DNA of 64,000 bases, taken from the IMG/VR virus record IMGVR_UViG_3300042868_005134, positions 248,001 to 312,000 of that record; one strand, 5' to 3'. Made by a program: the position numbers and the translations under genes. Below, piece by piece: positions 19,401-31,200 of the stretch; within the stretch, counting starts at the first letter, position 1; every line of letters starts with the position of its first letter. Under the pieces are notes generated by a model. That model did no database searches and was not told the DNA's origin. It was given only the letters and a program-made list of their open reading frames with translations.

Positions 19401-19413
19401 ATTTTTTCTCCTA

Positions 19414-19459
19414 TGCGATTTAAGGCTCGCAAATACCAACGGATCAGTTATGGCTGATC
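19414..19459 (-). promoter_or_regulatory. two hairpins in polymerase leader (candidate translational operator)
   Basis: UGCGA-GCCUUAAA-UCGCA (19414-19431) abutting SD; GAUCAG-6nt-CUGAUC (19442-19459). Confidence 0.5.
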
Positions 19460-19470
19460 AAACCCTTCTC

Positions 19471-19758
19471 TTACATATTTATAAGTCTAATATAGCCCAC
19501 TATGTCAATAGTGACTAACAGTATATAGTTGGCAACCATGCCTGTACTCTTGCGAGTCCAAGCGGCCCATCCAAAGATAGCACATTGTACAATGAATATT
19601 GGGTATAGATAAAAGAACAGTGGATCGGTTGCCCCGGCTGCTAGCGTTAGCGAACACCCGAGGCTCATAAACCATGCTGTGATTTCCAATGTAAATCGGG
19701 TGGGCCATTCTCTGTAGTCTCGCCTTGCCCAATTAAAAATGCCTTTTAAAAAATCCAT
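19471..19758 (-). CDS. small 3-TM membrane protein
   Basis: three hydrophobic segments in 95 aa. Confidence 0.7.
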   Translation of the reverse strand: MDFLKGIFNWARRDYREWPTRFTLEITAWFMSLGCSLTLAAGATDPLFFYLYPIFIVQCAIFGWAAWTRKSTGMVANYILLVTIDIVGYIRLINM

Positions 19759-20024
19759 TAATCTTTCGGCAAGCGTCCAGTTACACCAAGAATCATTTCA
19801 ATTTCGTTCCAATCATTTTCATGATCTCGCCAATTGTCTTTGTGAGCAATGGTTATGGCTTTGTTAATAATGCTGGGTTTTACATCAAGTTCTTCTGCTA
19901 CTGCTTTAACAGTTTCTTTTAAACCTTCTTTGAGATCTTCAATTTCTCTCAAAACAGTCGAACCTTCGTTAATCAAACGTTCTAATTTGGCTTTTTCCTC
20001 AGGTCCATACATGCGTGTTGACAT
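19758..20024 (-). CDS. DsbA/GapR-like small dsDNA-binding protein
   Basis: helical LERLINE...EIEDLKEGLKETVKAVAEELDVKPSIINKAI pattern; family call tentative. Confidence 0.5.
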   Translation of the reverse strand: MSTRMYGPEEKAKLERLINEGSTVLREIEDLKEGLKETVKAVAEELDVKPSIINKAITIAHKDNWRDHENDWNEIEMILGVTGRLPKD

Positions 20025-20044
20025 TTAACTCTCCTTAAAATGTA

Positions 20045-20073
20045 ATTATACAGTAGTTATCGTTGTAAGTCAA
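20045..20073 (-). promoter_or_regulatory. sigma70 promoter TTGACT-17-TATAAT driving the polymerase operon
   Basis: -35 20068-20073, -10 20045-20050. Confidence 0.85.
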
Positions 20074-20103
20074 CAACACCAAAATTAATATTGTTCAAAC
20101 ACA

Positions 20104-20132
20104 TTGACTGTCTAGCTCGAAAATAGTATAAT
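20104..20132 (+). promoter_or_regulatory. sigma70 promoter TTGACT-17-TATAAT (divergent), 6 nt before ATG
   Basis: -35 20104-20109, -10 20127-20132. Confidence 0.85.
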
Positions 20133-20138
20133 AACGCT

Positions 20139-20465
20139 ATGAAGAAACTTTTATTACTGTCAATGTTTGCCGCTCAATTGGCCAGTGCTCAGACTTTTCA
20201 CGATTGGGATAACCCCAGTAAAAAGTTTGACCTTGGTAATACTACTAAATCATTTAACATCACTGTTAAGTCGACAGATGATGTACAAAAGATATGCGAA
20301 GCAGAAAGTAAGAATAGAGGCCACGGCGGCTTTGGGTTTCAAGTAAACAGTTGTGCCTTTTGGAACACTGAACAAACTGAGTGTACTATCGTAACACCCA
20401 AACGATCCAGCATGCACTTGCTAGGACACGAATTGCTACATTGCCTAAAAGGTAACTGGCATTAA
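20139..20465 (+). CDS. secreted small HExxH protein (putative zinc peptidase)
   Basis: signal peptide MKKLLLLSMFAAQLASA; LGHELLHC. Confidence 0.75.
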   Translation: MKKLLLLSMFAAQLASAQTFHDWDNPSKKFDLGNTTKSFNITVKSTDDVQKICEAESKNRGHGGFGFQVNSCAFWNTEQTECTIVTPKRSSMHLLGHELLHCLKGNWH

Positions 20466-20466
20466 A

Positions 20467-20486
20467 AAAGCGCCTTGCGGCGCTTT
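20467..20486. terminator. intrinsic terminator between convergent genes
   Basis: AAAGCGCC-TTGC-GGCGCTTT; GCAA loop and U6 tail on minus strand. Confidence 0.85.
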
Positions 20487-20487
20487 A

Positions 20488-22908
20488 TTAGAATCGGAAA
20501 GCTGATCTAATTCGTTTAAGAATTTCGTCGTCTTCGGATTTAACATCTTCGAAAGTTGACCTATCAACATTGGGAGCACCTGCTGAAATTGGACCTGAAG
20601 ATGGCCTTGTTCTGCTCCTATCTCTGGCATCGCCTTGAGCTTTAATTAATGCCGCAGCCGCTTCTGGATATGCTGGATCCCCAGGGTTTACGACCTTACC
20701 ATTGAATGTGATAGGACCATCTGGTTTGCCCATTCGTAAAGTACCATCTACAGATTGTTTAGATTGAGTACTTGTACTTGTGTTTGTACTTGTTCCGCTT
20801 GTACTTGCGGGTACGCCAGCTGCCGGACTTGCTGCCTGATTGCTAGTACTAGCTGCAGCCACTTTATCTAATCCTTTTAACGCACTTTCTAATCGTGTTT
20901 TTAGTTCAGGAGGTAACTGAGCCATCATGTCAGTATTTTTCTGATATTGTAATATTACAGCCATGTGCTTCTTGATAAGTTCTTGATCAGCAGGATCCAT
21001 CGAAGGAAGTTCATCGTCCTTGAATGTATCATACAAAGCCTTGCCCACATCGTATGCGGTCCATGCTGCCATGCCTGCTCCTACTATCAGTGCCGCAGGC
21101 CCAGCCAACGCAGAGGCTCCAGCCCGCGCCGCAATTTTCCTGCCAATACCCGAGGCCCCGCCCAGCTTGCTGGTAAACTTAGCTAACTTACCTGGTGCAG
21201 TAGGCGACCCAGATCGGCCTCCTAGTCCAAAAGGATCATTGGCGCGACTAAGAGCAGGATTAGGGTTTCGAGCCATTGCCATTCTAGCTTGTGTGCCAGC
21301 ATCACGTACTCGACCGCCTGAATTGGGCGGCACATATATGTCTGCTTCAACTAGTAGACTCCAAATCTCCATTTGTTCTTGTAATGTAAAATTAGAAATA
21401 TTTTCTAGAACTAGCGCATCGTCAGGATGTATACTTTCTGATTTGATTTTATTTTTTGCGAGAATGGCTTCGATTGCCTTGATTGAATTTTCTAATTCTG
21501 TAGTATTAGTTGTGTTTACTTTAGATCCTGCGCTTTGACCTGCACCAGCTGTAGGTTTTGCTCCACCCACTGGATTACCAGTCTTAGGATCATACCCTAA
21601 CGCAGTCATTCTTTTAACAAACTCTGGGTTTCCTAAACTTACTGTACCGGGGCCTTGACCCGGCTTAACATTATAGGCATAAGCCAATCCTGCAATGTTT
21701 GCGTACTCGTCTGTACTAACCTTGCCGCTTAAACTTCTAATAGCCGCTGTAGTTAATGGACCGTCTTTTCCATCTAAATCTAACTTTTGTCCGTGTTTTG
21801 TATTTAGGTAGTGCTGTATAGCTTTAGTTCCAGGATTGGCCGGTCCTACTTTACCTGCTGCAGGACTTGCGGATTGTCCACCTGGTTTTGTAGTACTCCC
21901 TGCTGCGTTAGCAGACATGGCTTTACCTAGTTCAGCATCGGTACGATCTACATTATCACCGTATTCTTTTTCTCGAGCCGCCTGTGCGTTAGCAGACATG
22001 GCTTTACCTAGTTCAGCATCGGTACGATCTACATTATCACCGTATTCTTTTTCTCGAGCCGCCTGTGCGTTAGCAGACATGGCTTTACCCAGTTCAGCGT
22101 CATCTCTATCTGCTTGATTAGGATCAACTTTTTGACCAGTTGGCGCTGCCAGTTTATCCACGGCCTTTTGTGCGGCACCTAATGCTTGTATAACAGCTGG
22201 ATCATCTATATCTGCCAGTTCTGCCATTAACGATTTAATTTCAGCAACTTCACTTTGATACTTACCCGCTGTTACACCTGTTGCTGGATTTCTAACAGGT
22301 TCGCCTGTGCCCAGTGTCACTTTTTCGTACAACTCATAGCTAAAACTTTCAACTAGTGTACGGGATATAGATCCGTCGAATGAAATAGACTCCATAGTGC
22401 TGCCACTAATCTTGGCCACTAGGTCATTTAATCTTTTTAATCTAGGAGCAACAAACGCATCACTGCTTTGTTTACCCTGTACATTGGCACTTTGTTGTTT
22501 TACAGCACTTGATGCTTTGTCGTTGGCAGCTTGCGAATCTTTGTCTAGGCCAAATTTACCTGTACCTATTAAGCCACCTAGTGCTGAAGTCTTTGCTGTA
22601 CCTGGTACTAATCCTAGTTTTGCCAATGATTGTGTATCAGCTTCTCTTGCTGTTGCGGAAATGTCATAGTTACTCTGCCCACGATCGCCCGATGGCATAC
22701 TCTGTTTTCTAACAAAGTATCCGCTTACAGGATCATACAGACCGGGCAGGTTTTCCTTCCATGCTAGGTCGTTTAAAATACCAGCACGTTTTTGTTCGTC
22801 TTTTTCTTGGCCAACAGCAGCCTGTATGTCTTTCATAGTTATGGCTTCATTTAAAATCTGTCTAGATTCAATCTTGTCCATTCTAGCTATAAGTGCTTTC
22901 AAGTCCAT
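20488..22908 (-). CDS. large low-complexity probable virion/ejection protein with peptidoglycan-binding-like domain and 27-aa repeat
   Basis: AIQHYLN...LDGKDGPLTTAAI (PG-binding-like); hydrophobic GAxLAGPAALIVGAG stretch; many hydrophobic-x-E sites. Confidence 0.7.
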   Translation of the reverse strand: MDLKALIARMDKIESRQILNEAITMKDIQAAVGQEKDEQKRAGILNDLAWKENLPGLYDPVSGYFVRKQSMPSGDRGQSNYDISATAREADTQSLAKLGLVPGTAKTSALGGLIGTGKFGLDKDSQAANDKASSAVKQQSANVQGKQSSDAFVAPRLKRLNDLVAKISGSTMESISFDGSISRTLVESFSYELYEKVTLGTGEPVRNPATGVTAGKYQSEVAEIKSLMAELADIDDPAVIQALGAAQKAVDKLAAPTGQKVDPNQADRDDAELGKAMSANAQAAREKEYGDNVDRTDAELGKAMSANAQAAREKEYGDNVDRTDAELGKAMSANAAGSTTKPGGQSASPAAGKVGPANPGTKAIQHYLNTKHGQKLDLDGKDGPLTTAAIRSLSGKVSTDEYANIAGLAYAYNVKPGQGPGTVSLGNPEFVKRMTALGYDPKTGNPVGGAKPTAGAGQSAGSKVNTTNTTELENSIKAIEAILAKNKIKSESIHPDDALVLENISNFTLQEQMEIWSLLVEADIYVPPNSGGRVRDAGTQARMAMARNPNPALSRANDPFGLGGRSGSPTAPGKLAKFTSKLGGASGIGRKIAARAGASALAGPAALIVGAGMAAWTAYDVGKALYDTFKDDELPSMDPADQELIKKHMAVILQYQKNTDMMAQLPPELKTRLESALKGLDKVAAASTSNQAASPAAGVPASTSGTSTNTSTSTQSKQSVDGTLRMGKPDGPITFNGKVVNPGDPAYPEAAAALIKAQGDARDRSRTRPSSGPISAGAPNVDRSTFEDVKSEDDEILKRIRSAFRF
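21904..22098 (-). repeat. 81-bp in-frame tandem repeat, about 2.4 copies
   Basis: tgcgttagcagacatggc starts at 21904, 21985, 22066; encodes DRTDAELGKAMSANAQAAREKEYGDNV. Confidence 0.9.
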
Positions 22909-22930
22909 ATCAATTCCTAATAATATACAT

Positions 22931-23026
22931 GCTCACTTCTAGTGTGCCTTCCGGGGCACGACTCCCAAACACTCTAGGGCAGCAGCCGCCCCACACCAGT
23001 AACGCATAACGTCCTAAGGTAGTGTG
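22931..23026 (-). ncRNA. candidate structured RNA element (unassigned)
   Basis: 96-nt intergenic stretch, 56/96 GC, three consecutive stems, ends about 22 nt before ATG 22908. Confidence 0.45.
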
Positions 23027-23452
23027 TTACTTGGGCACACAGTTTGGAACTGTCTTGCCACCTTTTTTCTTTGTACCTACAGGCTTGTAGCCTTTCCAAC
23101 AAGGATTGTCCTTGGGATCTTTTAATCCTTCGATTACCTTGCTTGCTAATTTTGTTGCTTTCTGTTTAGTTCGATCCGCACTTTCGGCAAATTCTTGCTC
23201 AACAGTTTTAAAATACTTACCAATCATGCTGGGCTTTGCGCCCACTGCCACATTCAATACTGGACTAGTAACAGTTTCTCTTGCTACTGGTTTGCTATGA
23301 TACACAGCAATACTTTCTGCTTGCGTCAATCGATTTGAAGGGCCTTGCCCTTCTTTAATTACAGATACAAAACGTTTCATATCGTTAACGCCAACTACCG
23401 CAGGTTTTGAATCCACGCGGTCCAGCGTTTGTAGAATTTTCTTCATGTCCAT
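23027..23452 (-). CDS. probable head-internal protein
   Basis: C-terminal PCWKGYKPVGTKKKGGKTVPNCVPK module; IKE/G, FAE/S, VIE/G sites. Confidence 0.6.
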   Translation of the reverse strand: MDMKKILQTLDRVDSKPAVVGVNDMKRFVSVIKEGQGPSNRLTQAESIAVYHSKPVARETVTSPVLNVAVGAKPSMIGKYFKTVEQEFAESADRTKQKATKLASKVIEGLKDPKDNPCWKGYKPVGTKKKGGKTVPNCVPK

Positions 23453-23460
23453 GATACTAA

Positions 23461-24705
23461 TTAACGTTTAATGCCTGCGGCAGTAAGTGCATCGGCTCTA
23501 TCTTTATAACCTTTAACACCTGGCTTAATATCTTTAGCTGACTTGCCAATAGCAGCTTTTACTTTAGGGGAAGCATCGCTTGCGTTAACATGCTTCATCG
23601 TAGTTTTTTCTTGATGACTGGCTTCATACATACTGCCACATTCTTTCATACCATGTATTGGACAGCTTTTGCCTCTAGCAGTGTGATTACATTTGCCTTC
23701 GCCAAGTGCCGCACTTGCTCCTGCTTTCTTTAGATCTTGCGGTGTGGCTCTCATACCGGGAACAGTAGTTTTAGCAGTAGCAGCAATACCAGATCGCTGT
23801 GGCGCACCACTTATTGCGGTTTCTTTAACTTTAGCAAATGGATTTTTCTTTTTGTCAGCAATAGCCTTCTTCATTGGCTCTTTCTTGTTGCCGTCTTTAT
23901 CCATATCTAAGAAGTCTGGCTTCTTGCCTTCTTTAAATGTTGGATTGGTTGGCCCTGGAGTTTTAGCACTCCAACGCTTGCCTTTGTGTGGACCCGAAGT
24001 TACAACAGGATACTGACCGTCTTTGCCTTTTGGTGGAGGAGCACTAGCACCATCTGGATTCATAGGAGCCATCGATTCTTTTACTTCTTTATCTCTGTTG
24101 TCAAATTTCTCGCTGTCTTTCATGCCCCATGTTTTGGCACTCTTTGGACTTTGCTTTAGTTTTGGAGACTGTGATTTCTTCTCAGCGGCTGATTGTCCTT
24201 TAGCATGGCTTGCTTTGCCTTTGCCTGATTTCTGTTCAGATTCGCCGTCATCTTTGTAACTGGTATTAGTGTGCTTAACACCTGTTGATGTTTTTTCTAG
24301 TTCACCAGTGCGAGTCTTTTTCTTATCGCCTACTTTAGCTTTGTCATCGAAAGTTTCGTCTAAATCTTTTTGATTTTTTTCTTTTAACTTTTCTAACTTA
24401 ACTTTAGCTTCGGTTAGTTTCTTTTTGAATTCTTTGCGTACAGCTTCGGTGTACATGTCAGAATTTTCAATTTTGCTACCGTACTCACTAAACTTCATTT
24501 CGTATTCTAAATAGTGAAAAACGCTGGCAACATAATCAGCTGCTTTAGTAATTTTAGCTTGTACCCAACCTTCAAGTTGGTCACCATCTTGGATCATTTT
24601 AAATAGCTTGAAGCTATAGTTGGCTGTCTTGTAAAGATCGGCCCTGGCCATTGCGGCTTCTTGATCATCTGGATGAGGGTGATTCATCATATTCATTCCT
24701 GGCAT
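23461..24705 (-). CDS. K/E-rich probable prohead core/internal protein
   Basis: low complexity; KPDFLDMDKDGNKKEPMKKA and CNHTARGKSCPIHGMKEC modules separated by xxE sites; late promoter upstream. Confidence 0.6.
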   Translation of the reverse strand: MPGMNMMNHPHPDDQEAAMARADLYKTANYSFKLFKMIQDGDQLEGWVQAKITKAADYVASVFHYLEYEMKFSEYGSKIENSDMYTEAVRKEFKKKLTEAKVKLEKLKEKNQKDLDETFDDKAKVGDKKKTRTGELEKTSTGVKHTNTSYKDDGESEQKSGKGKASHAKGQSAAEKKSQSPKLKQSPKSAKTWGMKDSEKFDNRDKEVKESMAPMNPDGASAPPPKGKDGQYPVVTSGPHKGKRWSAKTPGPTNPTFKEGKKPDFLDMDKDGNKKEPMKKAIADKKKNPFAKVKETAISGAPQRSGIAATAKTTVPGMRATPQDLKKAGASAALGEGKCNHTARGKSCPIHGMKECGSMYEASHQEKTTMKHVNASDASPKVKAAIGKSAKDIKPGVKGYKDRADALTAAGIKR

Positions 24706-24728
24706 AGTAGTAAACTCCGTTGTTCTAA

Positions 24729-24735
24729 TATTTAT
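24729..24735 (-). promoter_or_regulatory. putative late promoter ATAAATA
   Basis: 23 nt before ATG 24705. Confidence 0.55.
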
Positions 24736-24971
24736 CGTTTTATTGCAGGTCCGCCGAACAAACTAACTCCTGTAGCCTTGTTGGGATCAACTGCTTTTAC
24801 CTTGGGTTGCGGCGGTGCTTTTGTGCCGCTTTTTCCAGGGCTTCCTATATAGCTTCTTTTACCCCGGGCTGGACCTGGACTAATGTGTGGATTTACCACT
24901 GTGCCTATGTTAGCAGTACTTGTAGCACCTGCTGTAGCACTTTCTTTCATGGTTATTTCACGTATTTTCAT
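24732..24971 (-). CDS. small basic probable internal protein
   Basis: MKIREITMKE/SA leader. Confidence 0.65.
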   Translation of the reverse strand: MKIREITMKESATAGATSTANIGTVVNPHISPGPARGKRSYIGSPGKSGTKAPPQPKVKAVDPNKATGVSLFGGPAIKR

Positions 24972-24972
24972 A

Positions 24973-25605
24973 TCAAGACTCGAATAAATCCAATGCTATA
25001 TTCCAATGCGCCACACGATCTTCTAGACCAATAGTTCCACCGTTAATACGTTTACTTAACAACACAATGTCACCCTTGTCACAAATAGCGTTAAGTCCAT
25101 TCTTGTGCCAAAACCAGCAGGCACTCAGTGTGGCATAAGCTGGTTGTCTTAGCAAATCTGGATTTTCTATTAGACAATCGTCGCCAAACAACTCTCTGCT
25201 ACAACGTGTATAGTTATCACGCCCTGTGATTTGTAGTATGCCACGTCCTCTAAACTTCCAACCATCACCACTTTGTTCGTTTCCGTTGGCCATACGACTA
25301 GCATATATACGATTGGCAATCATTTCAGGTTTGCGTTCATATTGTGCTGCCAGAGCATCTGTTGGAAAGTACTTGCCAAATAAACCACGTAGTCCCTTGG
25401 CACTGTAGTTTAAGTTTTCCTGTAGCACAGTGAAGTCTAAACTTTCGTGTTGACATTGTGCGATGAATCCTGCCACGCGAGCAGGTGTTGTAATTTCAAA
25501 TGCTGGAAAGTGTTCAGCAAATGCTTCATACCACATTTGTGGATTTTTATTTTTATGTATACACTCAGCTAATTTTTCTGGTGTAAATTCAAATTCAAAA
25601 CTCAT
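24973..25605 (-). CDS. glycoside hydrolase family 19 endolysin
   Basis: FIAQCQHES, ENLNYS, GRGILQITGRDNY, RINGGTIGLEDR; start trimmed to MSFEF. Confidence 0.9.
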   Translation of the reverse strand: MSFEFEFTPEKLAECIHKNKNPQMWYEAFAEHFPAFEITTPARVAGFIAQCQHESLDFTVLQENLNYSAKGLRGLFGKYFPTDALAAQYERKPEMIANRIYASRMANGNEQSGDGWKFRGRGILQITGRDNYTRCSRELFGDDCLIENPDLLRQPAYATLSACWFWHKNGLNAICDKGDIVLLSKRINGGTIGLEDRVAHWNIALDLFES

Positions 25606-26312
25606 TTTTCTCTCCCTGATTTCATATTGGCCATCCAATGGGCTAGTTGACCTTTTCTGCCACCTTGCTTGGCAACCTTGCGTAATGTACTTATGCTAGC
25701 CTTGGTTGGAACTCCGTGACGTTTGCTGTCACCTTTGTCTTGCGGATTTTTGCCATCCGCAAAGTTTTCTTCCAAGTCAACAGCATCATCTTTAAAAAAT
25801 TCTGGATACTTTTTATTAAAGTGTCTCATTATTATGGCAGCTTGAGCATTTGCTTCGTTTTCTATTTCGCTACCAGTACCGCCGCTATTGACATCTAGTC
25901 TGTGTTCTGTATTTTGTTTAAAGTGTATAAGTTCGTGTGCCAGTGTTCTTAATATATCCAATGCGTGTCTGTTTTCTATAGCTAGATAGATTATTTGTTC
26001 ACTGTCATCGTATTTTCCAAAAGTGGGTTGCTCGTGATCTATAATAATCTTTTCTAATTTGATTTTAGGCAACTTCTTTAATGCCAGTGCATGCATGGCC
26101 AAGGGTAAAAATTTTGTAAATGCAGTCATCAACTGCGGTTTGTTATCTGTATCTTCAGACACTCCACTGTATCCTGCGTCTGCGCCGTAACTGCCAGCAG
26201 GCCCAGGACCTGCTACAGGTTTCTTAGGAGTAATATAGGCCTTGGGTTTTTTATTATATTTCTTGGCTCTAACACCTTTTTTATGTTCGTCTACGATTTG
26301 GTGAGCTTTCAT
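25602..26312 (-). CDS. HExxH metallopeptidase-like protein (IrrE/ImmA-like) with low-complexity flanks
   Basis: LRTLAHELIHFKQ...EIENEANAQA. Confidence 0.7.
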   Translation of the reverse strand: MKAHQIVDEHKKGVRAKKYNKKPKAYITPKKPVAGPGPAGSYGADAGYSGVSEDTDNKPQLMTAFTKFLPLAMHALALKKLPKIKLEKIIIDHEQPTFGKYDDSEQIIYLAIENRHALDILRTLAHELIHFKQNTEHRLDVNSGGTGSEIENEANAQAAIIMRHFNKKYPEFFKDDAVDLEENFADGKNPQDKGDSKRHGVPTKASISTLRKVAKQGGRKGQLAHWMANMKSGREK

Positions 26313-26605
26313 CGGGGTTGCTCTCCAGTCATATAGGGCAAACTAAACCATAACTTGAACCATTCAGCATCACCGGGTCTAATATTGTTCTTACGCATTA
26401 TTTCAGCTTTCTCTGTGCCGCTTTGACCAAACGATTCGCCATAGCTGACCTGTTGCCCACGATATTCATGTAGTCTGGCTTGACCGCCAAGGCCGCCAAG
26501 GCCTGATAAAATTTTAAGTTCTTGTATGGGGTCAGCAGGATCAAGATAGCAGTCATCAGGACTGTCTCGATTCAAGTCATGGCTAGTGACCTTGTACTGC
26601 TTCAT
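26309..26605 (-). CDS. hypothetical phage protein
   Basis: coupled ORF ending EWFKLWFSLPYMTGE. Confidence 0.7.
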   Translation of the reverse strand: MKQYKVTSHDLNRDSPDDCYLDPADPIQELKILSGLGGLGGQARLHEYRGQQVSYGESFGQSGTEKAEIMRKNNIRPGDAEWFKLWFSLPYMTGEQPR

Positions 26606-27036
26606 TTTAGCGTGGCCTTTAACATCCAGCCGTGTTTGCGATGTGCGTCCATTCTTCCAGCAACAAAATCACTGAAGCCATGTTCGCCCATTTGTTCGCT
26701 TAGGTCGAACACCATCTTTAAAATTTTAACTATTTTTTCGTTATCAGTTAACAATTCAATAACCATTTGTTTGCTATCTAGGATTTCTGTTTCGTCTTCG
26801 ATTTGCGTCAGCATACTGAATCGTTGTAGACTAGATGGTGCGTAAGTGCCTAGTGCTCTTAGTTCTTCGGCAAACGTATCAATGCTGCCATAAACTTCTT
26901 GATAGATCCTTCCAAACAATGAATGAAACGATTCGAAAAACATTCCTTCAACGTTCCAATGAAAGTTTTGTGCTTTTAAGAAAAAGCTAAATTCAGTGGC
27001 AAATGCTATCTTAGCCGCCTTTTGTAATTCTTCCAT
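26602..27036 (-). CDS. dps: Dps / ferritin-like DNA protection protein
   Basis: KAQNFHWNVEG, FHSLF, IDTFAEELRALG, HRKHGWML. Confidence 0.92.
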   Translation of the reverse strand: MEELQKAAKIAFATEFSFFLKAQNFHWNVEGMFFESFHSLFGRIYQEVYGSIDTFAEELRALGTYAPSSLQRFSMLTQIEDETEILDSKQMVIELLTDNEKIVKILKMVFDLSEQMGEHGFSDFVAGRMDAHRKHGWMLKATLK

Positions 27037-27038
27037 TA

Positions 27039-27896
27039 TTATTTCCTTGTCTTTTTAAATCTTTTGAATATGTGAAACTTTTCGCTAACTGGCTGCGTCT
27101 TAGGTTCTTCTTTCTTAGGAGGATTTAACAATTCCTGTCCACGCTTGCGACTTGCCGCACTTTTAGCTTGTTGACGATCCCATGCTTTACTTAGTTTAGC
27201 GGCAGCACTCATGCGAGCAGTCTCCGACATGTCTCGCTCAGGTTCTTTTGTTTTCTTTACAGGTTTAGCTTTTTCTTTATCTGCTTTTAGTTTGGCCTTG
27301 CTGGCCTTGTCAGCTTCCTTGGCCGCCGCCTGATCCAAGTATGGAGTTAAGAAATGTTTAACAACGTCAAAGAAAGGACGACCAGCAACACGAGTATCAG
27401 CAGGAACTCCAGCAGCACGTTCAAATGCTGCTCGGTCATTGGCTGCTACTGCTGCACGTAAATCTGTTGCGCTGGATATACGTGCCGCTGGTTCCCACAC
27501 AATGTCTCTAAACTTGTAATAGCCGTGAGGACCTTCTTTACCATTAGACTTTTGTAATGCTGGCACAAATACTTTTGAATCGTTTTCATCAGTTACAACA
27601 TGTAGCGTCACAGCACCGTGATTTTTGTAAACCATTGATGCTAAAGTGAACCAACTTTGTTCCGCTACTAGATGCCCTTCGATTTCAGGCATGATAGTTT
27701 TCATTGCGTCAATCTTTACATTAAAAGGCAATGGGTCTTTTGGGCCTTGTGTGCTTTGATTAGTACCAATATACCATTCATCAAATTTAGATGCGGTGCT
27801 CCAGGCAGCTTTGTGGCCTTGATGTGGTGGATTAAATCGACCGAATATAATGCCCACGGACTTGTTTCTTGATTCGAATAGTTCTCTTAGTTTCAT
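27039..27896 (-). CDS. HIGH-superfamily nucleotidyltransferase (cytidylyltransferase-like)
   Basis: IIFGRFNPPHQGH, KDPLPF, ISSATDLR. Confidence 0.8.
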   Translation of the reverse strand: MKLRELFESRNKSVGIIFGRFNPPHQGHKAAWSTASKFDEWYIGTNQSTQGPKDPLPFNVKIDAMKTIMPEIEGHLVAEQSWFTLASMVYKNHGAVTLHVVTDENDSKVFVPALQKSNGKEGPHGYYKFRDIVWEPAARISSATDLRAAVAANDRAAFERAAGVPADTRVAGRPFFDVVKHFLTPYLDQAAAKEADKASKAKLKADKEKAKPVKKTKEPERDMSETARMSAAAKLSKAWDRQQAKSAASRKRGQELLNPPKKEEPKTQPVSEKFHIFKRFKKTRK

Positions 27897-27897
27897 C

Positions 27898-28239
27898 TTA
27901 ATTCTCGTCGTAGCGACCGTCTTCTACGTTTTTTGTTTCTTGCTCGTGTAACGCATTACAAATACCTTCGCACATGTCTTTTTCAAGATCCGGCTCTAGT
28001 CCTTCTACTTTAAAAGTGCTTTGATATGATTCGTAGGCTTTTTTAACCAGTCCTTCGAAAGCTCTTGGATGTACCGACTTTCCTGATTCTACATATTCTT
28101 TAAATTTGTTCATTACAGGAAAGTATTCCTTACGATAAAACTGAGGGTCGTTTTGCATAAAACAAACCAGATCATCTTTAAGATCGTAGCCTAATTGCTT
28201 CTTGTTAGAATCTGCGGGTAATAAATCGTTAATTTCCAT
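27898..28239 (-). CDS. hypothetical phage protein
   Basis: ORF; no clear SD. Confidence 0.7.
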   Translation of the reverse strand: MEINDLLPADSNKKQLGYDLKDDLVCFMQNDPQFYRKEYFPVMNKFKEYVESGKSVHPRAFEGLVKKAYESYQSTFKVEGLEPDLEKDMCEGICNALHEQETKNVEDGRYDEN

Positions 28240-28282
28240 AGCTGTGTACCAAATTTAGCAGGGACAGCTTGTACTCATGAGA

Positions 28283-28319
28283 AGTCCCCTATCTCGTGTA
28301 TTTATCGAAATAGGGGACT
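28283..28319 (-). promoter_or_regulatory. 10-bp hairpin with ATAAATA late motif in its loop
   Basis: AGTCCCCTAT(28283-28292)/ATAGGGGACT(28310-28319); ATAAATA 28299-28305. Confidence 0.55.
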
Positions 28320-28322
28320 GGC

Positions 28323-28964
28323 TTAGGCTTTAATTACAGACTCTATCTTTGCTATTGACTCACCCATAAACATCCTGACCATGGTCAGTGTTTGATCGCC
28401 TTTGACGTAAAAGTAGCTGCCGCCCCAACTTGTGTTACGGGACAAACTGCGTTTAGCTGTTGGCGTCAGCTTTATCTTCTTGTTATTTTTACACCACTCT
28501 ACAAAATTTGTATGATTTTGTTTAGTTTTACCCAGGAAAATTTTGTAATCAAAGTCTAGTTTTTTTACAATTACTGTATTGTTTGCTAATTCGGGATTAG
28601 CTTTGTTTGGTACACTGATGTATTTTACACGATCCGGATCAATTGATGCTAATTTTTCTAAGTTAACAGATACGTTTGTATAGACATTAATTAATGGGTG
28701 TTCTATTCGCAATTCGTAATCGGACAGCTTGAACATAACATTGTGTAATGTTTTACAATACTCTAAATCCTTGGGTGTTTTGATCTTGAGCCAGACTGGG
28801 TATTGTTCGGGGTCCGCTAGTTCGCCAAATTTACTTGACACAAATGTCAAATCATTGCCTCTAAACCAATTGGCCACTGGACAAACAAGTACAATTTTGT
28901 ACTTGTACTTGTTCATAAAGAGCTTGGTAGTATCTTTAATCTTGACTGATTTTGGCAGTTTCAC
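28323..28964 (-). CDS. hypothetical phage protein
   Basis: ORF overlapping clpA end. Confidence 0.7.
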   Translation of the reverse strand: MKLPKSVKIKDTTKLFMNKYKYKIVLVCPVANWFRGNDLTFVSSKFGELADPEQYPVWLKIKTPKDLEYCKTLHNVMFKLSDYELRIEHPLINVYTNVSVNLEKLASIDPDRVKYISVPNKANPELANNTVIVKKLDFDYKIFLGKTKQNHTNFVEWCKNNKKIKLTPTAKRSLSRNTSWGGSYFYVKGDQTLTMVRMFMGESIAKIESVIKA

Positions 28965-31200
28965 TTAGTGGAATCCTTGCTACCTTTGGCTTGGCAATCA
29001 ACAACAAGTTATCGTTTTCAACAACAATACTCAATGCCCCGCCGCCCTTTAGCTCTCCAAACAACATTAGTTTAGCAAGTGGCCGCTTGATTTCTTTATC
29101 GATTACTCGCTGTAATGGCCTTGCGCCCATCTTGGCATCAAAACCTTTTTCAATCAACCAATCAATTGCGTCATCACTAATCTTGATGCGAATAGCTTTT
29201 TCTTTGATTTGTCCTTTAAGCTCAACCATGAACTTACCAACAATTTTAATCATTGTTTCTTTAGTCAGCTTGCCAAACGTAACAACACCATCCAACCGAT
29301 TACGGAATTCTGGAGCAAAGAATTTCTTAAGATCTGTATCGCTGTAATCTTTATCTTGCTTACCAAAGCCAATGGCATTCTTCTCACTTGCTTGTGCGCC
29401 AGCATTTGTGGTAATAATAAGAATTAGATTACGACAATCTGCTTGTTTTCCATTTGAACCTGTGATAAAACCATTGTCCATCATCTGTAACAAGATTGTT
29501 GACACATCTGGGTGACTTTTTTCAATTTCGTCTAACAGTAATACACAGTTGGGACTTTCTTGAATTTTTGTAATCAGCAATCCAGCATTTTCTTCAAAGC
29601 CCACATACCCAGGTGGACTGCCAATCAACTTGGAAAGACTATGCTTTTCTTGATATTCACTCATGTCAAAGCGGACAAGTTTAGTACCCAAGTGCTTGGC
29701 CAGTGCCTTGGCTGTTTCAGTTTTACCTGTACCAGTTGGTCCCATGAACACAAAGCTACCCACCGGTTTGTTTTCACTCTTCAATCCCGCCCGGGCAACT
29801 AGAATCTTGTCTACAATTTCTGTAATAGCAGAATCTTGTCCGTACACTTCTTGTTTCAATTGACTTTCCAGGTTAGCAAGATTTCCAGCTTCCTGTTCTG
29901 CGATTTGCTCTTCAGGTATTTGAATCAGCTTTGCCATTTCAAACTGTATGCTTGCTTCGTTGACAACTCGTTCATCGGCCAGCTTCAAATTAAATCTTGA
30001 GCAAGCTAAATCAATCAAGTCAATGGCCTTGTCGGGCAACTTCTTATCTGTTTGATATTTAACACTCAATTTGATTGAGGCCTGTAGTGCATCATCTTTA
30101 ATTTTAACATTATGATGTTGCTCATAATATTTCTTAATACCCTTAAGGATTTGTAATGTTACTTCTGGTGTAGGCTCGTCGACAGTAATGCGTTGGAAAC
30201 GGCGCATTAACGCACGATCCTTTTCAAAGTACTTGCGATATTCTTCCCATGTGGTGCTGGCAATAACTTTGATGTTGCCCTTACTCAACGCAGGTTTCAT
30301 CATGTTGGCAAGATCATTTGATCCATTGCTGGCACTGCCAGCACCACTAATCATGTGTGCCTCGTCGATAAACAACACTGTCTTACCTTTCTTGCTTAAC
30401 CCTTTAAGCACAGCTTTAAATCGTTCTTCAAAGTCTCCACGATACTTACTACCTGCTAACATTGCGCTAATATCTAAGTTGTATACGCTGTAGTCTTTCA
30501 AGAAGTCAGGAACTGCTCCGTTTACAATGTTGTGAGCAAGACCTTCAGCAATGGCAGTCTTACCAACACCGGGATCACCCACAAGGATCACGTTGCTCTT
30601 ACTGCGCCTTCCTAATGCTAGGGCAATATTTTCTAATTCATCTATTCGACCAATAACAGGATCTACTTTGCCTTTTTTAACTTGTTCATTTAAATTTGTA
30701 GTAAATGCTTTTAGTGCTCGATCACTTTGTGTATCTTTAGGTTCGTTTTCTTCTTCCAACGGGGTTTCCACTTCATTATTAAGGTAATCTGCAAACTTGT
30801 CTTTGTCAATGTTTGCTTGCTGGATATAATAGTTACTCCAACTGCGCTTCTCACTCATCATGGCAAGAAATACATCGGTAGGTTCGATACGTTGTCTACC
30901 GTTGAATAACACCTGTGTAAACGCACGATTAAGTACACGTTCCACAGTTTGTGTTTTGCGAGGCTTGATGTCAGTGGTTACACCAATTATTTCGTCGCAT
31001 TTGGTCTTGAGATAATGTTCCAGATTCTTTTTAATATAATCCGGATCGGCTCCGTAACCTGTTACACAGTTGGTAAAACTTTCTTCACAGAGCATGGCAA
31101 ACAGCAAATGCTCAATGGTAAGATACTCGTGTTTTAATTTTTTGGCAACATCTATTGCTTTTTCAAACACTAGTTGTAATTCGGTGCTGGGTTCTACCAT
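28936..31200 (-). CDS. clpA: ATP-dependent Clp protease ATP-binding subunit ClpA
   Basis: HEYLTIEHLL N-domain, GDPGVGKT and GPTGTGKT Walker A, DEAH/DEIEK, IGF loop, GARPL; no ClpB M-domain. Confidence 0.93.
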   Translation of the reverse strand: MVEPSTELQLVFEKAIDVAKKLKHEYLTIEHLLFAMLCEESFTNCVTGYGADPDYIKKNLEHYLKTKCDEIIGVTTDIKPRKTQTVERVLNRAFTQVLFNGRQRIEPTDVFLAMMSEKRSWSNYYIQQANIDKDKFADYLNNEVETPLEEENEPKDTQSDRALKAFTTNLNEQVKKGKVDPVIGRIDELENIALALGRRSKSNVILVGDPGVGKTAIAEGLAHNIVNGAVPDFLKDYSVYNLDISAMLAGSKYRGDFEERFKAVLKGLSKKGKTVLFIDEAHMISGAGSASNGSNDLANMMKPALSKGNIKVIASTTWEEYRKYFEKDRALMRRFQRITVDEPTPEVTLQILKGIKKYYEQHHNVKIKDDALQASIKLSVKYQTDKKLPDKAIDLIDLACSRFNLKLADERVVNEASIQFEMAKLIQIPEEQIAEQEAGNLANLESQLKQEVYGQDSAITEIVDKILVARAGLKSENKPVGSFVFMGPTGTGKTETAKALAKHLGTKLVRFDMSEYQEKHSLSKLIGSPPGYVGFEENAGLLITKIQESPNCVLLLDEIEKSHPDVSTILLQMMDNGFITGSNGKQADCRNLILIITTNAGAQASEKNAIGFGKQDKDYSDTDLKKFFAPEFRNRLDGVVTFGKLTKETMIKIVGKFMVELKGQIKEKAIRIKISDDAIDWLIEKGFDAKMGARPLQRVIDKEIKRPLAKLMLFGELKGGGALSIVVENDNLLLIAKPKVARIPLSETAKISQD

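What the first reader, a model, noticed from the sequence alone, without database searches (positions are those of the whole stretch)
20488..28239. Capsid-cargo locus: enzymes flanked by prohead-protease-type Glu sites
Seen: neighbouring genes start with similar short leaders (MKIREITMKE/S, MKLRELFE/S, MKAHQIVDE/H, MDLKALI...ILNE/A). Two enzyme domains are bracketed by such sites: the nucleotidyltransferase (LFE/S ... MSE/T) and the HExxH peptidase (VSE/D ... LEE/N). Established: T4 internal proteins carry an MKTYQEFIAE capsid-targeting leader removed by gp21 after Glu. Inference: these enzymes, and perhaps Dps, are packaged, trimmed and injected with the DNA as pre-made anti-defence tools.
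Basis: partly seen in the sequence, partly recalled or inferred. Interest (0 to 1): 0.62.

Follow-up and report, generated by a model that had tools for sequence, protein, structure and literature searches.

The report
Leader-tagged capsid cargo genes, jumbo phage
A giant T4-related phage tags many unrelated small enzymes and basic proteins with one short N-terminal leader like the T4 signal that loads proteins into the capsid; their domains are joined at sites fitting the capsid protease, so they are probably packaged cargo, though no virion data prove it.

Summary
The window lies in a 383-kb uncultivated jumbo myovirus of the RaK2/PA5oct group. It encodes a T4-type prohead protease (Peptidase_S77) and a gp23-type capsid protein.

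Sixteen of 439 genes, three of them in this locus, start with M-[KR]-x-x-[EQD]-[FLIV] (1.4–2.5 expected). Eleven of the 16 also carry a hydrophobic-x-Glu site at residues 7–14 (p=5e-6). These proteins are not paralogues, and the conservation is at peptide level.

An HMM built from these leaders ranks all six T4 capsid-targeting N-termini within the top 32 of 274 T4 ORFs.

In related metagenomic phages, 254 of 1052 neighbouring ORFs carry the leader. Module junctions are hydrophobic-x-Glu: 43 of 50 contexts before one nearly invariant C-terminal module (p=4e-18).

The zincin peptidase has only three such sites: the leader end and both borders of its folded core. Overall site density equals background, so position carries the signal, not number.

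A late-type promoter motif (GATAAATA) precedes the locus.

Best reading: late-expressed, T4-IP/Alt-like head cargo trimmed by the prohead protease. This is unproven. A PA5oct virion-proteome proxy was inconclusive. Dps and the GH19 lysin lack leaders. The anti-defence role is speculative.

The parts
28299..28306 (-). GATAAATA late-promoter-like motif, 60 nt upstream of the first gene of the locus. It lies in the loop of a 10-bp hairpin (arms 28310-28319 and 28284-28293).
   Evidence: NATAAATA occurs 72 times in the genome, and 55 of these lie within 80 nt upstream of a start codon in the right orientation, including tail-fibre, baseplate and head-operon genes. Sequence read.
27898..28239 (-). 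113-aa acidic ORF (MEINDLLPAD...), function unknown. Its start is leader-like (M-E-I-N-D-L-L) but there is no second Glu site nearby.
   Evidence: ORF; no Pfam, PHROG or NCBIfam hit; pI 4.7.
27039..27896 (-). 285-aa HxGH-type nucleotidyltransferase. Layout: leader MKLRELFE|S (27873-27896), catalytic domain (GRFNPPHQGH ... ISSATDLR), Lys-rich helix, junction DMSE|T, then a 60-aa basic C-terminal module (27042-27221).
   Evidence: Family hits: PHROG cytidyltransferase 7.5e-15; Pfam CTP_transf_like 0.0018, below cut-off; TIGR00125 2.4e-5; weak NadR/NMNAT hits. Leader residues M1, L6 and E8 are invariant in 20-25%-identical homologues. Orthologues carry 61-aa and 226-aa inserts exactly between M-A-E| and V-[SA]-E|TARMS.
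26602..27036 (-). 144-aa Dps/ferritin-like protein with no leader.
   Evidence: Pfam Ferritin 7e-18; PHROG 3636 1.5e-23; NCBIfam Dps models below cut-off; N-terminus MEELQKAAKIAF.
26309..26605 (-). 98-aa ORF, function unknown, no leader.
   Evidence: no family hits.
25602..26312 (-). 236-aa minimal zincin (gluzincin-type) metallopeptidase. Layout: leader MKAHQIVDE|H (26286-26312); Lys-rich then Gly/Tyr-rich spacer ending GVSE|D; folded core residues 59-181 (25770-26138) with invariant H126-E127-x-x-H130 and E151; junction DLEE|N; C-terminal module NFADGKNPQDKGDSKRHG...AHWMANMKSG (25605-25766).
   Evidence: Alignment A1. AF2 gives pLDDT >90 for the core and <50 for both flanks. Foldseek finds abylysin/selecase minigluzincins, IrrE/PprI, Wss1/SPRTN and CapP (E about 0.01, TMt 0.5-0.58). 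The protein has only three [LIVFM]xE sites, at 9, 53 and 182. The C-module is 82-98% identical on many unrelated proteins.
24973..25605 (-). GH19 chitinase-type endolysin-like protein (210 aa from the ATG start, 221 aa from the TTG start at 25638), no leader.
   Evidence: PHROG 181 endolysin 3.3e-77; Pfam Glyco_hydro_19 1.1e-6.
24732..24971 (-). 79-aa basic protein. Leader MKIREITMKE| (24942-24971) is followed by SATAGATSTANIGTV, a copy of the sequence that follows the predicted maturation site of the major capsid protein (LAE|SASAGATSAGNVATL).
   Evidence: The same module follows hydrophobic-x-Glu in eight further relatives, twice inside larger proteins.
24729..24736 (-). Second GATAAATA late-promoter-like motif, 24 nt upstream of the 414-aa gene and overlapping the stop codon of the 79-aa ORF.
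23461..24705 (-). 414-aa very basic (pI 9.6, 20% K+R) low-complexity protein with no leader. It contains a DxDxDG-type motif (PDFLDMDKDGNKKEPMKKA) shared with cyanophages.
   Evidence: 83-87% nucleotide identity over about 65 nt to Synechococcus and Prochlorococcus myoviruses; weak PHROG hits to families of unknown function.
23027..23452 (-). 141-aa basic protein. N-terminus MDMKKILQTLDRVDS resembles that of the 806-aa protein. It has sites at 34, 90 and 108, and a C-terminal mini-module GLKDPKDNPCWKGYKPVGTKKKGGKTVPNCVPK (23030-23128) preceded by VIE|G.
   Evidence: PHROG 9737/4359 (unknown function) 4e-10/2e-8. In relatives the CWKGY module is flanked by hydrophobic-x-Glu on both sides.
20488..22908 (-). 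806-aa protein. Long leader-like N-terminus MDLKALIARMDKIESRQILNE|A (22846-22908), three 27-aa repeats, and a hydrophobic segment. It is a paralogue of a leader-tagged 700-aa protein elsewhere in the genome; the aligned region covers that protein's PG_binding_1 domain.
   Evidence: blastp to g28927 (43% identity over 160 aa). PG_binding_1 is found in the paralogue. No family hit of its own.
21899..22098 (.). 81-bp tandem repeat, 2.5 copies, 98% identical, encoding the 27-aa repeats of the 806-aa protein.

Best explanation
The locus is a late-expressed cassette in a RaK2/PA5oct-related jumbo myovirus. Most of its products are probably head-internal cargo.

Proposed mechanism:
1. A short N-terminal propeptide (consensus M-[RK]-x-x-E-[FL]-Φ-x-E) acts like the T4 capsid-targeting sequence. 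It brings otherwise unrelated proteins into the scaffolding core of the prohead.
2. The T4-type prohead protease (Peptidase_S77) removes the leader after the Glu.
3. The same protease also cuts at hydrophobic-x-Glu sites placed at every junction between modules. This releases folded enzyme cores and small, very basic peptides. The enzyme cores here are an HxGH nucleotidyltransferase and a minimal zincin peptidase.
4. The cargo stays with the DNA and may leave with it at infection.

Shown here: the leader family, its peptide-level conservation, its resemblance to T4 leaders, the junction rule, the presence of the protease, and the late-promoter motif.

Inferred: targeting, cleavage, packaging, ejection and any host-directed role.

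The Dps-like protein, the GH19 lysin and the 98-aa ORF have no leader and need not be cargo.
For: 1. Protease and substrates. Peptidase_S77 (7e-27) and Gp23 (1e-82) are present in the same genome. The capsid protein's predicted propeptide ends YLAE|S, and the scaffold homologue starts MLEALKSLFE|N.

2. Leader family. 16/439 genes versus 1.4-2.5 expected. A second Φ-x-E lies at residues 7-14 in 11/16 versus 65/423 (p=4.6e-6). Only one paralogous pair exists among carriers and locus proteins, g28927 (carrier) and the window's 806-aa protein. Arg4 uses four different codons and the upstream DNA is unrelated, so selection acts on the peptide.

3. Link to T4. An HMM of these leaders ranks Alt 7th, gp24 8th, alt.-1 12th, IPI 15th, and IPII/IPIII 31st/32nd of 274 T4 ORFs (hypergeometric 8e-5 for the top 15, 3e-5 for the top 50). 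The bipartite pattern also hits T4 gp22 and gp21.

4. Relatives.
- Homologues of the zincin start with the leader whatever their architecture.
- 254/1052 neighbouring ORFs carry it, with the Glu at residue 8-9 and S/A/N/D/Q/G after it.
- All five complete relatives (338-400 kb) encode S77.

5. Junction rule.
- Before the NFADG[KR] module, P1 is E in 50/50 contexts and P3 is V/L/M/I/F in 43/50, while P2 and P4 vary (p=4e-18).
- Inserts in nucleotidyltransferase orthologues are bracketed M-A-E| ... V-[SA]-E|.
- The CWKGY module is flanked likewise.
- The 79-aa family repeats the capsid protein's P1'-P15' context after its leader Glu.

6. Accessibility. The zincin's three sites are the leader end and both borders of the AF2 core; both flanks are predicted disordered.

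7. Timing. GATAAATA is found upstream of the locus and inside it. Leader genes are modestly enriched for the motif (5/16 vs 50/423, p=0.04).

8. Context in a characterised relative.
- In PA5oct most genes between ClpA and DNA polymerase (9 of 12, gp299-gp310) are flagged ESI-MS/MS.
- The gp67-position protein gp150 (MKINDIITE|G) is a virion protein and is the homologue of the leader-bearing g168671.

9. Precedent. T4 internal proteins share only a capsid-targeting sequence (PMC3012670). T4 Alt is processed by gp21 at both ends (PMC5694885).
Against: - There are no proteomic or N-terminal data for this phage or any close relative.
- In PA5oct the bipartite leader is not significantly enriched among MS-detected virion proteins (5/89 vs 8/353, p=0.098). 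A rigid PSSM gave no enrichment there.
- The same rigid PSSM did not rank T4 capsid-targeting proteins highly; only the indel-tolerant HMM did, and each individual E-value was insignificant.
- The PA5oct orthologue of the nucleotidyltransferase lacks a leader and an MS flag.
- Overall Φ-x-E density is at background.
- P1 Glu and P3 hydrophobic before the C-terminal modules could be structural parts of the modules rather than cleavage sites.
- The leader patterns were defined after inspection.
- The IMG/VR relatives are phylogenetically related, so their counts are not independent events.
Confidence: 0.6

Rival explanations
1. The proteins are packaged, but as structural or DNA-organising head contents, not as injected effectors. 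They would be core, 'inner body' or internal-peptide-like material that helps build or fill a very large capsid. The enzyme domains would act inside the prohead or be incidental.
For: Most leader-tagged products and released modules are small, very basic and low-complexity (pI 9.5-10.8, 16-20% K+R). Leader-like N-termini also occur on the scaffold homologue and on the gp67-position core protein. The C-terminal modules are nearly invariant across divergent phages, which fits a conserved phage-internal partner such as DNA or the shell better than a variable host target. The 79-aa protein mimics the capsid protein's N-arm.
Against: The zincin keeps an intact HExxH...E site and the nucleotidyltransferase keeps HxGH/ISSxT..R. 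Other leader proteins carry PG-binding, GDSL or cell-wall-hydrolase domains, or ligase-like KxDG motifs, which suggest targets outside the capsid. In T4, proteins tagged this way are mostly ejected.
Confidence: 0.17
2. The leader is only a favoured N-terminal helix or translation start, and the locus is an ordinary set of late or auxiliary cytoplasmic genes (nucleotide metabolism, Dps, lysin). The hydrophobic-x-Glu sites are helix-capping or module-boundary features that are never cleaved.
For: Lys or Arg at position 2 and A-rich second codons are common at bacterial and phage starts (general knowledge). Site density is at background. The PA5oct proxy test was not significant. Dps, the lysin and the PA5oct NTase orthologue lack leaders.
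Against: The two-part motif is sharply positioned (Glu at residue 8-9 in 125/254 vs 29/798). It is conserved as strongly as catalytic residues in 20%-identical homologues. It is replaced by another variant of the same class in an 84%-identical orthologue (MNLRELLE vs MKAHQIVDE). It is found on a quarter of the genes in homologous neighbourhoods but on only about 1-2% of T4 or PA5oct genes. It ranks T4 capsid-targeting proteins. The P3 rule before modules holds while P2 and P4 vary.
Confidence: 0.12
3. The proteins are modular 'polyvalent-type' polyproteins processed by the leader-tagged zincin peptidase itself, not by the prohead protease. Packaging, if it happens, would use another determinant, for instance the conserved C-terminal modules.
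For: Zincin-like metallopeptidases are the hub domain of predicted virion-delivered polyvalent proteins and are proposed to process them (PMC5512222). In relatives the zincin is fused to the nucleotidyltransferase or to HAD-like domains in 328-903-aa proteins. The C-modules co-occur almost perfectly with the leader.
Against: The capsid protein's predicted maturation site has the same Φ-x-E motif and the same downstream context as the 79-aa family, and capsid-protein maturation is the job of the S77 enzyme in T4-type phages. Many leader proteins occur in the genome at a distance from any zincin gene. Cleavage after Glu is the documented specificity of gp21-type proteases (PMC5694885), whereas the specificity of this zincin is unknown.
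Confidence: 0.08

Closest known systems
T4 internal proteins IPI/IPII/IPIII and Alt, with the capsid-targeting sequence (CTS) and gp21 processing
   Same: Unrelated proteins share only a roughly 10-residue N-terminal leader ending hydrophobic-x-Glu (T4: MKTYQEFIAE|, MELITELFDE|, MAKINELLRE|). The phage encodes a gp21-family S77 protease. Expression is late. A packaged enzyme (Alt) is reported as processed at both termini. The leader HMM from this phage ranks the T4 CTS proteins highly.
   Different: The leader is one residue shorter and favours Arg at positions 2 and 4 (M-R-x-x-E-F-Φ-x-E). There are about 16 carriers per genome instead of about 5. The cargo is built from swappable mini-modules separated by further sites, and it includes two nearly invariant basic C-terminal modules that have no T4 counterpart. 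Nothing here is experimentally verified.
phiKZ / SPN3US ejection and inner-body proteins processed by the S80 prohead protease
   Same: These are jumbo phages with many head-internal proteins cut after Glu at a three-residue motif, with multiple sites per protein. The N-terminal propeptides are proposed to act as targeting signals (PMC5694885).
   Different: Those phages use A/S/G-x-E motifs and mostly propeptides longer than 100 residues, and they belong to a different lineage. Here the motif is V/L/I/M-x-E and the leader is 8-10 residues, as in T4.
Polyvalent proteins of phages and conjugative elements (Iyer et al. 2017, PMC5512222)
   Same: There is a zincin-like metallopeptidase hub, nucleotidyltransferase and peptidoglycan-directed domains, and predicted delivery with the DNA. 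In relatives the zincin and the nucleotidyltransferase are fused in 794-903-aa proteins.
   Different: In this window the domains are separate single-domain genes. A shared short N-terminal leader, and protease sites at the junctions, do not appear in the passages of that paper I read ('leader' occurs 0 times).
Minigluzincins (abylysin, selecase) and IrrE/ImmA/Wss1-type minimal zincins
   Same: The fold is a roughly 120-residue core with HExxH plus a downstream Glu.
   Different: There is no significant sequence similarity (PDB phmmer E=0.38 to an unrelated chain), the Foldseek E-value is only about 0.01, and the substrate is unknown.

Membership tests
T4-type CTS-tagged head cargo (IP/Alt-like) | The phage encodes a gp21-family (Peptidase_S77) prohead protease and a gp23-type capsid protein. 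| tested here: met
   PF03420 91.8 bits and PF07068 275 bits in the same genome.
T4-type CTS-tagged head cargo (IP/Alt-like) | Otherwise unrelated proteins share a short N-terminal leader. | tested here: met
   16/439 genes versus 1.4-2.5 expected. All-vs-all blastp of carriers and locus proteins found one paralogous pair (carrier g28927 and the window's 806-aa protein). Conservation is at peptide level.
T4-type CTS-tagged head cargo (IP/Alt-like) | The leader ends in the protease motif (hydrophobic-x-Glu) about 8-20 residues from the start. | tested here: met
   11/16 here (p=4.6e-6). In relatives the Glu lies at residue 8-9 in 125/254.
T4-type CTS-tagged head cargo (IP/Alt-like) | Sequence resemblance to the experimentally defined T4 CTS. 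| tested here: inconclusive
   The rank test is significant (all 6 T4 CTS N-termini in the top 32 of 274). However, individual E-values are 0.36-1.2 (Alt, gp24, alt.-1, IPI) and a rigid PSSM fails because the register is shifted by one residue.
T4-type CTS-tagged head cargo (IP/Alt-like) | Late expression together with head genes. | tested here: inconclusive
   A NATAAATA motif with promoter-like placement is present upstream. There are no transcript data, and enrichment at leader genes is modest (p=0.04).
T4-type CTS-tagged head cargo (IP/Alt-like) | The protein is present in purified virions with the leader removed. | not testable with these tools
   No isolate or proteome exists. The PA5oct proxy gave 5/89 vs 8/353, p=0.098.
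T4-type CTS-tagged head cargo (IP/Alt-like) | Ejection into the host with the DNA. | not testable with these tools
   Requires an experiment.
Polyvalent proteins (Iyer et al. 2017) | Several unrelated effector domains in one polypeptide with a zincin-like peptidase hub. | tested here: not met
   The window's proteins are single-domain. The feature is met only in relatives (794-903-aa NTase+zincin fusions, and HAD-like+zincin fusions).
Zincin (gluzincin) metallopeptidase | An HExxH helix plus a third Glu ligand, on a mixed beta-sheet and helix core. | tested here: met
   H126, E127, H130 and E151 are invariant in 20 sequences. The AF2 core has pLDDT >90. Foldseek finds minigluzincins, IrrE and Wss1. 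The Pfam DUF6782 hit is below cut-off.
HxGH nucleotidyltransferase superfamily (NMNAT/PPAT/cytidylyltransferase-like) | An N-terminal (T/H)xGH motif and a C-terminal ISxT..R motif on a Rossmann-like fold. | tested here: inconclusive
   Both motifs are visible in the sequence (PHQGH, ISSATDLR). PHROG cytidyltransferase scores 7.5e-15. Pfam and NCBIfam hits are below cut-off. The AF2 model is unusable (pLDDT 51). The substrate is unknown.
Dps / ferritin-like | A four-helix ferritin-like domain. | tested here: met
   PF00210 65 bits, above cut-off. Equivalog-level Dps models fall below cut-off. There is no leader.

The most novel reading that the evidence does not exclude
A clade of uncultivated 340-400-kb T4-related phages may run a combinatorial capsid-cargo system with four elements:
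- a universal 8-9-residue leader;
- interchangeable enzyme cores (zincin, HxGH and Pol-beta-type nucleotidyltransferases, ligase-like, HAD-like, and cell-wall hydrolases);
- spacer modules;
- nearly invariant, highly basic C-terminal modules of about 55-60 residues.

All of these would be concatenated through prohead-protease sites. A single protease would then turn a few polyproteins into a cocktail of enzymes plus small DNA-associated peptides.

The invariant C-modules, and the capsid-protein N-arm mimic, would be adaptor elements that hold cargo on the DNA or shell until ejection.
Probability: 0.35. Interest if true: 0.8.

Novelty: new variant of a known kind. Interest (0 to 1): 0.68.

Why it matters
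If the leader is a capsid-targeting propeptide, head cargo of a large and unstudied group of environmental jumbo phages can be read directly from sequence. That would be about 16 proteins in this genome and a quarter of the genes in homologous neighbourhoods.

It would extend the T4 internal-protein principle in three ways:
- to the RaK2/PA5oct lineage;
- to enzymes not previously considered packaged (HxGH nucleotidyltransferase, minimal zincin, ligase-like and Pol-beta-type transferases);
- to a modular polyprotein grammar in which every junction is a protease site.

It also yields short, testable parts: an 8-9-residue tag for loading proteins into large capsids, and two invariant basic modules of unknown role. 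It names candidates for pre-made host-takeover or counter-defence factors.

Tried and rejected
- **Rigid PSSM on PA5oct.** A position-specific matrix of the leaders gave no enrichment among ESI-MS/MS virion proteins (3/11 at score ≥4, p=0.39).
- **Rigid PSSM on T4.** CTS proteins ranked 41-272 because the register is shifted by one residue. I replaced it with an indel-tolerant HMM.
- **T4 late promoter.** TATAAATA is rare here (12 copies, none at leader genes). The working motif is NATAAATA.
- **Site density.** The density of hydrophobic-x-Glu in the locus proteins equals background, so counting sites says nothing either way.
- **Complex prediction.** S77 protease plus the first 36 residues of the 79-aa protein gave no verdict (score 0.00). 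I do not use it as evidence either way.
- **Nucleotidyltransferase structure.** AF2 on a six-sequence alignment gave mean pLDDT 51, so I ran no fold search on it.
- **PDB sequence searches.** Both enzymes gave only marginal or irrelevant hits.
- **Isolated phages.** tblastn of the C-terminal module found nothing. The zincin found only three freshwater Synechococcus jumbo phages.
- **Atlas look-alikes of the C-module.** Only unnamed viral clusters.
- **Rfam.** Nothing in 19000-29500.
- **Literature.** I found no paper describing this leader or mapping cleavage sites in the RaK2 group.
- **Not used.** Read-mapping tools and both large protein searches (the domain scans and locus searches sufficed). 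Only genetic code 11 was used.

Full report
**What the window is.** The 64-kb window is bases 248001-312000 of a single 383,411-bp IMG/VR virus record that CheckV rates as complete. The genome encodes:
- a T4-type prohead protease (Pfam Peptidase_S77, 91.8 bits);
- a gp23-family major capsid protein (275 bits), about 70% identical to those of Sinorhizobium phage Phosso, Vibrio phage 2.275.O, Pseudomonas phage PA5oct and the RaK2/GAP32/CBB group.

The head module has the T4 order: portal, a 79-aa gp67-position gene, an acidic gp68-like gene, protease, scaffold, capsid protein. By alignment with T4 gp23, the capsid protein's propeptide should end at YLAE|SASAGATSAGNVATL. The scaffold homologue begins MLEALKSLFE|N. 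These cleavage points are inferred, not measured. The RaK2 paper reports only that its capsid protein runs slightly below its predicted mass (PMC3622015).

**The locus.** Ten ORFs lie head to tail on the minus strand between 28239 and 20488. In transcription order they are:
1. a 113-aa acidic ORF;
2. a 285-aa HxGH nucleotidyltransferase;
3. a 144-aa Dps/ferritin-like protein;
4. a 98-aa ORF;
5. a 236-aa HExxH protein;
6. a GH19 endolysin-like protein;
7. a 79-aa basic protein;
8. a 414-aa basic low-complexity protein;
9. a 141-aa basic protein;
10. an 806-aa repeat protein.

**Transcription signals.**
- A GATAAATA motif lies 60 nt upstream of the first gene, and another lies 24 nt upstream of the 414-aa gene.
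- NATAAATA occurs 72 times in the genome. Fifty-five copies sit within 80 nt upstream of a start codon in the right orientation, many before tail, baseplate and head genes.
- I therefore read it as this phage's late promoter, a variant of T4's TATAAATA, which is itself rare here. This is inference from placement, not from transcripts.
- The locus ends at a pair of strong divergent sigma-70-like promoters at 20045-20132.

**The leader is a genome-wide family.**
- The pattern M[KRQYI]x[RNHTSQ][EQD][FLIV] is found at 16 of 439 N-termini. Expectation is 1.4 from internal Met contexts or 2.5 from position-wise composition.
- I wrote the pattern after looking at the data, so I tested a feature it does not contain. 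A [LIVFM]-x-E ending at residues 7-14 accompanies it in 11/16 genes versus 65/423 others (p=4.6e-6).
- All-vs-all blastp of carriers and locus proteins found one homologous pair: the carrier g28927 (700 aa) and the window's 806-aa protein.
- The DNA upstream of the carriers is unrelated, and Arg4 uses four different codons. So the shared element is a peptide, not a mobile DNA cassette.
- Carriers include the gp67-position core gene, proteins with PG_binding_1, GDSL and cell-wall-hydrolase domains, a ligase-like KxDG protein (DUF6267), a Pol-beta-type transferase-like protein and DUF6321.
- They cluster. One group lies at genome 27360-35773. The group in this window holds three of the nine strictest two-part leaders in the genome.

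**Resemblance to T4 leaders.**
- T4's internal proteins, Alt and gp24 start MKTFKEF...ITE|, MKTYQEFIAE|, MELITELFDE| and MAKINELLRE| (read from NC_000866).
- A rigid matrix from my leaders did not rank them, because the T4 leaders are one residue longer.
- An HMM that allows insertions ranked Alt 7th, gp24 8th, alt.-1 12th, IPI 15th and IPII/IPIII 31st/32nd of 274 T4 ORFs. The hypergeometric p is 8e-5 for four in the top 15 and 3e-5 for six in the top 50. Individual E-values are not significant, so this is a rank result only.
- The two-part pattern also picks T4 gp22 (MLKEQLIAE|A) and gp21 (MNEPQLLIE|T), both prohead-core proteins.
- Reviews state that T-even internal proteins share only the capsid-targeting sequence that brings them into the scaffolding core (PMC3012670).
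- gp21-type enzymes cut after Glu, and Alt is processed by gp21 at both its N- and C-terminus (PMC5694885).

**Relatives.**
- A scan of IMG/VR with the HExxH protein returned 216 relatives, of which 80 loci were kept.
- Almost every homologue, whether a 130-aa minimal protein or a 900-aa fusion, begins with the same kind of leader: MRAKQFITE, MRIIDLLE, MKITELLVE, MFAHELYE and so on.
- In an 84%-identical orthologue the leader is replaced by another variant of the class (MNLRELLE) while the following residues stay the same.
- Across the ±8-kb neighbourhoods, 254 of 1052 non-redundant ORFs carry the leader. The hydrophobic-x-Glu ends exactly at residue 8 or 9 in 125 of them versus 29 of 798 others (p=3e-39). 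The next residue is mostly S, A, N, D, Q or G.
- By the same definition T4 has 4 of 248 such ORFs and PA5oct 5 of 408.
- All five complete relatives (338-400 kb) encode Peptidase_S77.
- In three relatives the nucleotidyltransferase and the zincin are fused in one 794-903-aa protein. In that alignment leader residues M1, L6 and E8 are as invariant as the HxGH motif.
- The methylophage Melnitz (Kyanoviridae) has an NTase homologue starting MKKFSEIIE|A, among neighbours starting MKKFSELTSE and MQGFKTFLSE.

**The junction rule.** Its density in the locus proteins is indeed at background. But the positions are not random.
- *HExxH protein.* It has only three such sites, at 9, 53 and 182. AF2 predicts a confident core at residues 59-181 and disorder on both sides. 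Homology to other proteins starts at about 53-61 and the C-terminal module starts at about 180-183.
- *C-terminal module of the HExxH protein* (NFADG[KR]NPQDKGDSKRHG...AHWMANMK). It is 82-98% identical on dozens of otherwise unrelated, leader-bearing proteins. In 50 distinct upstream contexts P1 is always Glu and P3 is V/L/M/I/F in 43, while P2 and P4 vary freely (binomial p=4e-18 against 27%).
- *Nucleotidyltransferase.* Orthologues contain inserts of 61 and 226 residues. These lie exactly between M-A-E| and V-[SA]-E|, followed by a 60-aa basic module (TARMSAAAKLSKAW...KFHIFKRFKKTRK) that is 100% conserved even at 71% overall identity. In the window the two sites are merged into DMSE|T.
- *CWKGY...NCV mini-module* of the 141-aa protein. 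It is flanked in the same way in most contexts.
- *The 79-aa family.* After its leader Glu it repeats the sequence that follows the capsid protein's predicted maturation site. The same module follows L-Q-E| and I-A-E| inside larger proteins of relatives.

The economical reading is that all of these are sites for one enzyme, the S77 protease. The alternative, that Glu and the P3 hydrophobe are simply the first residues of each module, cannot be excluded from sequence alone.

**What the enzymes are.**
- *HExxH core.* It is a minimal gluzincin. H126, E127, H130 and E151 are invariant. The model matches abylysin/selecase minigluzincins, IrrE/PprI, Wss1/SPRTN and CapP, at Foldseek E about 0.01 and target TM 0.5-0.58. 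This fits the zincin hub of predicted virion-delivered polyvalent proteins (PMC5512222), but the window's version is a separate small gene.
- *Nucleotidyltransferase.* It has PHQGH and ISSATDLR motifs, with weak NadR/NMNAT and cytidylyltransferase hits. Its substrate is open and its AF2 model was unusable.

**Tests that did not support the idea.**
- PA5oct is the closest phage with virion mass spectrometry recorded in its GenBank notes.
- In its favour: most genes between ClpA and DNA polymerase, the syntenic position of this locus, are MS-positive (9 of 12, gp299-gp310). MS-positive gp150, gp237, gp238, gp380 and gp381 have two-part leaders. gp150 is the homologue of the leader-bearing gp67-position gene here.
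- Against: enrichment is not significant (5/89 vs 8/353, p=0.098; rigid matrix p=0.39). The PA5oct orthologue of the nucleotidyltransferase (gp307) has no leader, no basic tail and no MS flag.
- The complex prediction gave no verdict.

**Verdict.**
- I rate the reading as T4-like capsid targeting plus protease trimming as the best explanation, at about 0.6.
- The main uncertainty is the absence of any virion data. A secondary question is whether the cargo is structural or DNA-organising rather than injected effectors.
- The 'anti-defence' label is speculation.
- In my literature searches I found no description of this leader, of mapped prohead-protease sites in the RaK2 group, or of the two invariant C-terminal modules. 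I therefore class it as a new variant of a known kind.

**Procedural notes.** No read-mapping, no alternative genetic code and neither large protein search was used. 

Noticed in passing
window 24732-24971 (-): After its leader, the 79-aa protein copies the sequence that follows the predicted maturation site of the major capsid protein (SATAGATSTANIGTV vs SASAGATSAGNVATL). It is conserved in relatives, always after hydrophobic-x-Glu. It may be an N-arm mimic or a protease decoy.
   Followed up: partly
window 25605-25766 (-) and 27042-27221 (-): Two very basic C-terminal modules of 54-60 aa (NFADGK...AHWMANMKSG and TARMSAAAKLSKAW...KFHIFKRFKKTRK) are 82-100% identical across otherwise divergent proteins and phages. 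They have no Pfam family, no PDB match and no match in isolated phages.
   Followed up: partly
window 23037-23101 and 23855-23922: Two short stretches match T4-like cyanophages (S-CAM1, S-H34, P-TIM68 and others) at 81-87% nucleotide identity, although the genes are otherwise unrelated. They encode CWKGYKPVGTKKKGGKTVPNCVPK and PDFLDMDKDGNKKEPMKKA.
   Followed up: partly
window 21899-22098: An 81-bp tandem repeat (2.5 copies, 98% identical) inside the 806-aa gene encodes 27-aa repeats. It is probably recent and length-variable.
   Followed up: no
window 28284-28319 (-): The GATAAATA promoter-like motif sits in the loop of a perfect 10-bp hairpin (AGTCCCCTAT / ATAGGGGACT) between the upstream 213-aa gene and the locus.
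   Followed up: no
window 20045-20132: Two divergent sigma-70-like promoters (11 of 12 consensus matches each) lie back to back. They drive a plus-strand 108-aa signal-peptide protein (20139-20465) and the minus-strand 88-aa gene, and they mark the downstream end of the locus.
   Followed up: no
genome 27360-35773 (outside the window; L006): A second cluster holds six leader-tagged genes (plus leader-like MILRES g34979). They include a Pol-beta-type nucleotidyltransferase-like protein (GSNAAYSYTAQSDIDLH), a ligase-like KxDG protein (DUF6267), a PG_binding_1 protein paralogous to the window's 806-aa protein, and a match to a PHROG 'virion structural protein'.
   Followed up: partly
window 28936-31200 (-), 31659-32513 (-); genome 7015-9750, 334593-335183: By their N-terminal sequences the phage appears to carry its own chaperone and protease set: ClpA directly upstream of the locus, a DnaJ-like gene, and elsewhere ClpS-, DnaK- and ClpP-like genes. 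Only the PA5oct counterparts were checked against annotation.
   Followed up: no
T4 NC_000866 18966-19130 and 76061-76885 (L019, L020): In the T4 control, gp61.1 (MKTFKEFIKE...) has an N-terminus almost identical to the internal-protein targeting sequence. gp2 (MAIFQIINE...) scored 4th with the rigid matrix.
   Followed up: no
genome 74-3026 and 380712-383354 (outside the window): Both ends of the record carry similar 390-aa and 262-aa signal-peptide proteins (MKIAILAVGLL... / MRVASLIIGLL...). This suggests a diverged terminal duplication or an assembly of a terminal repeat.
   Followed up: no
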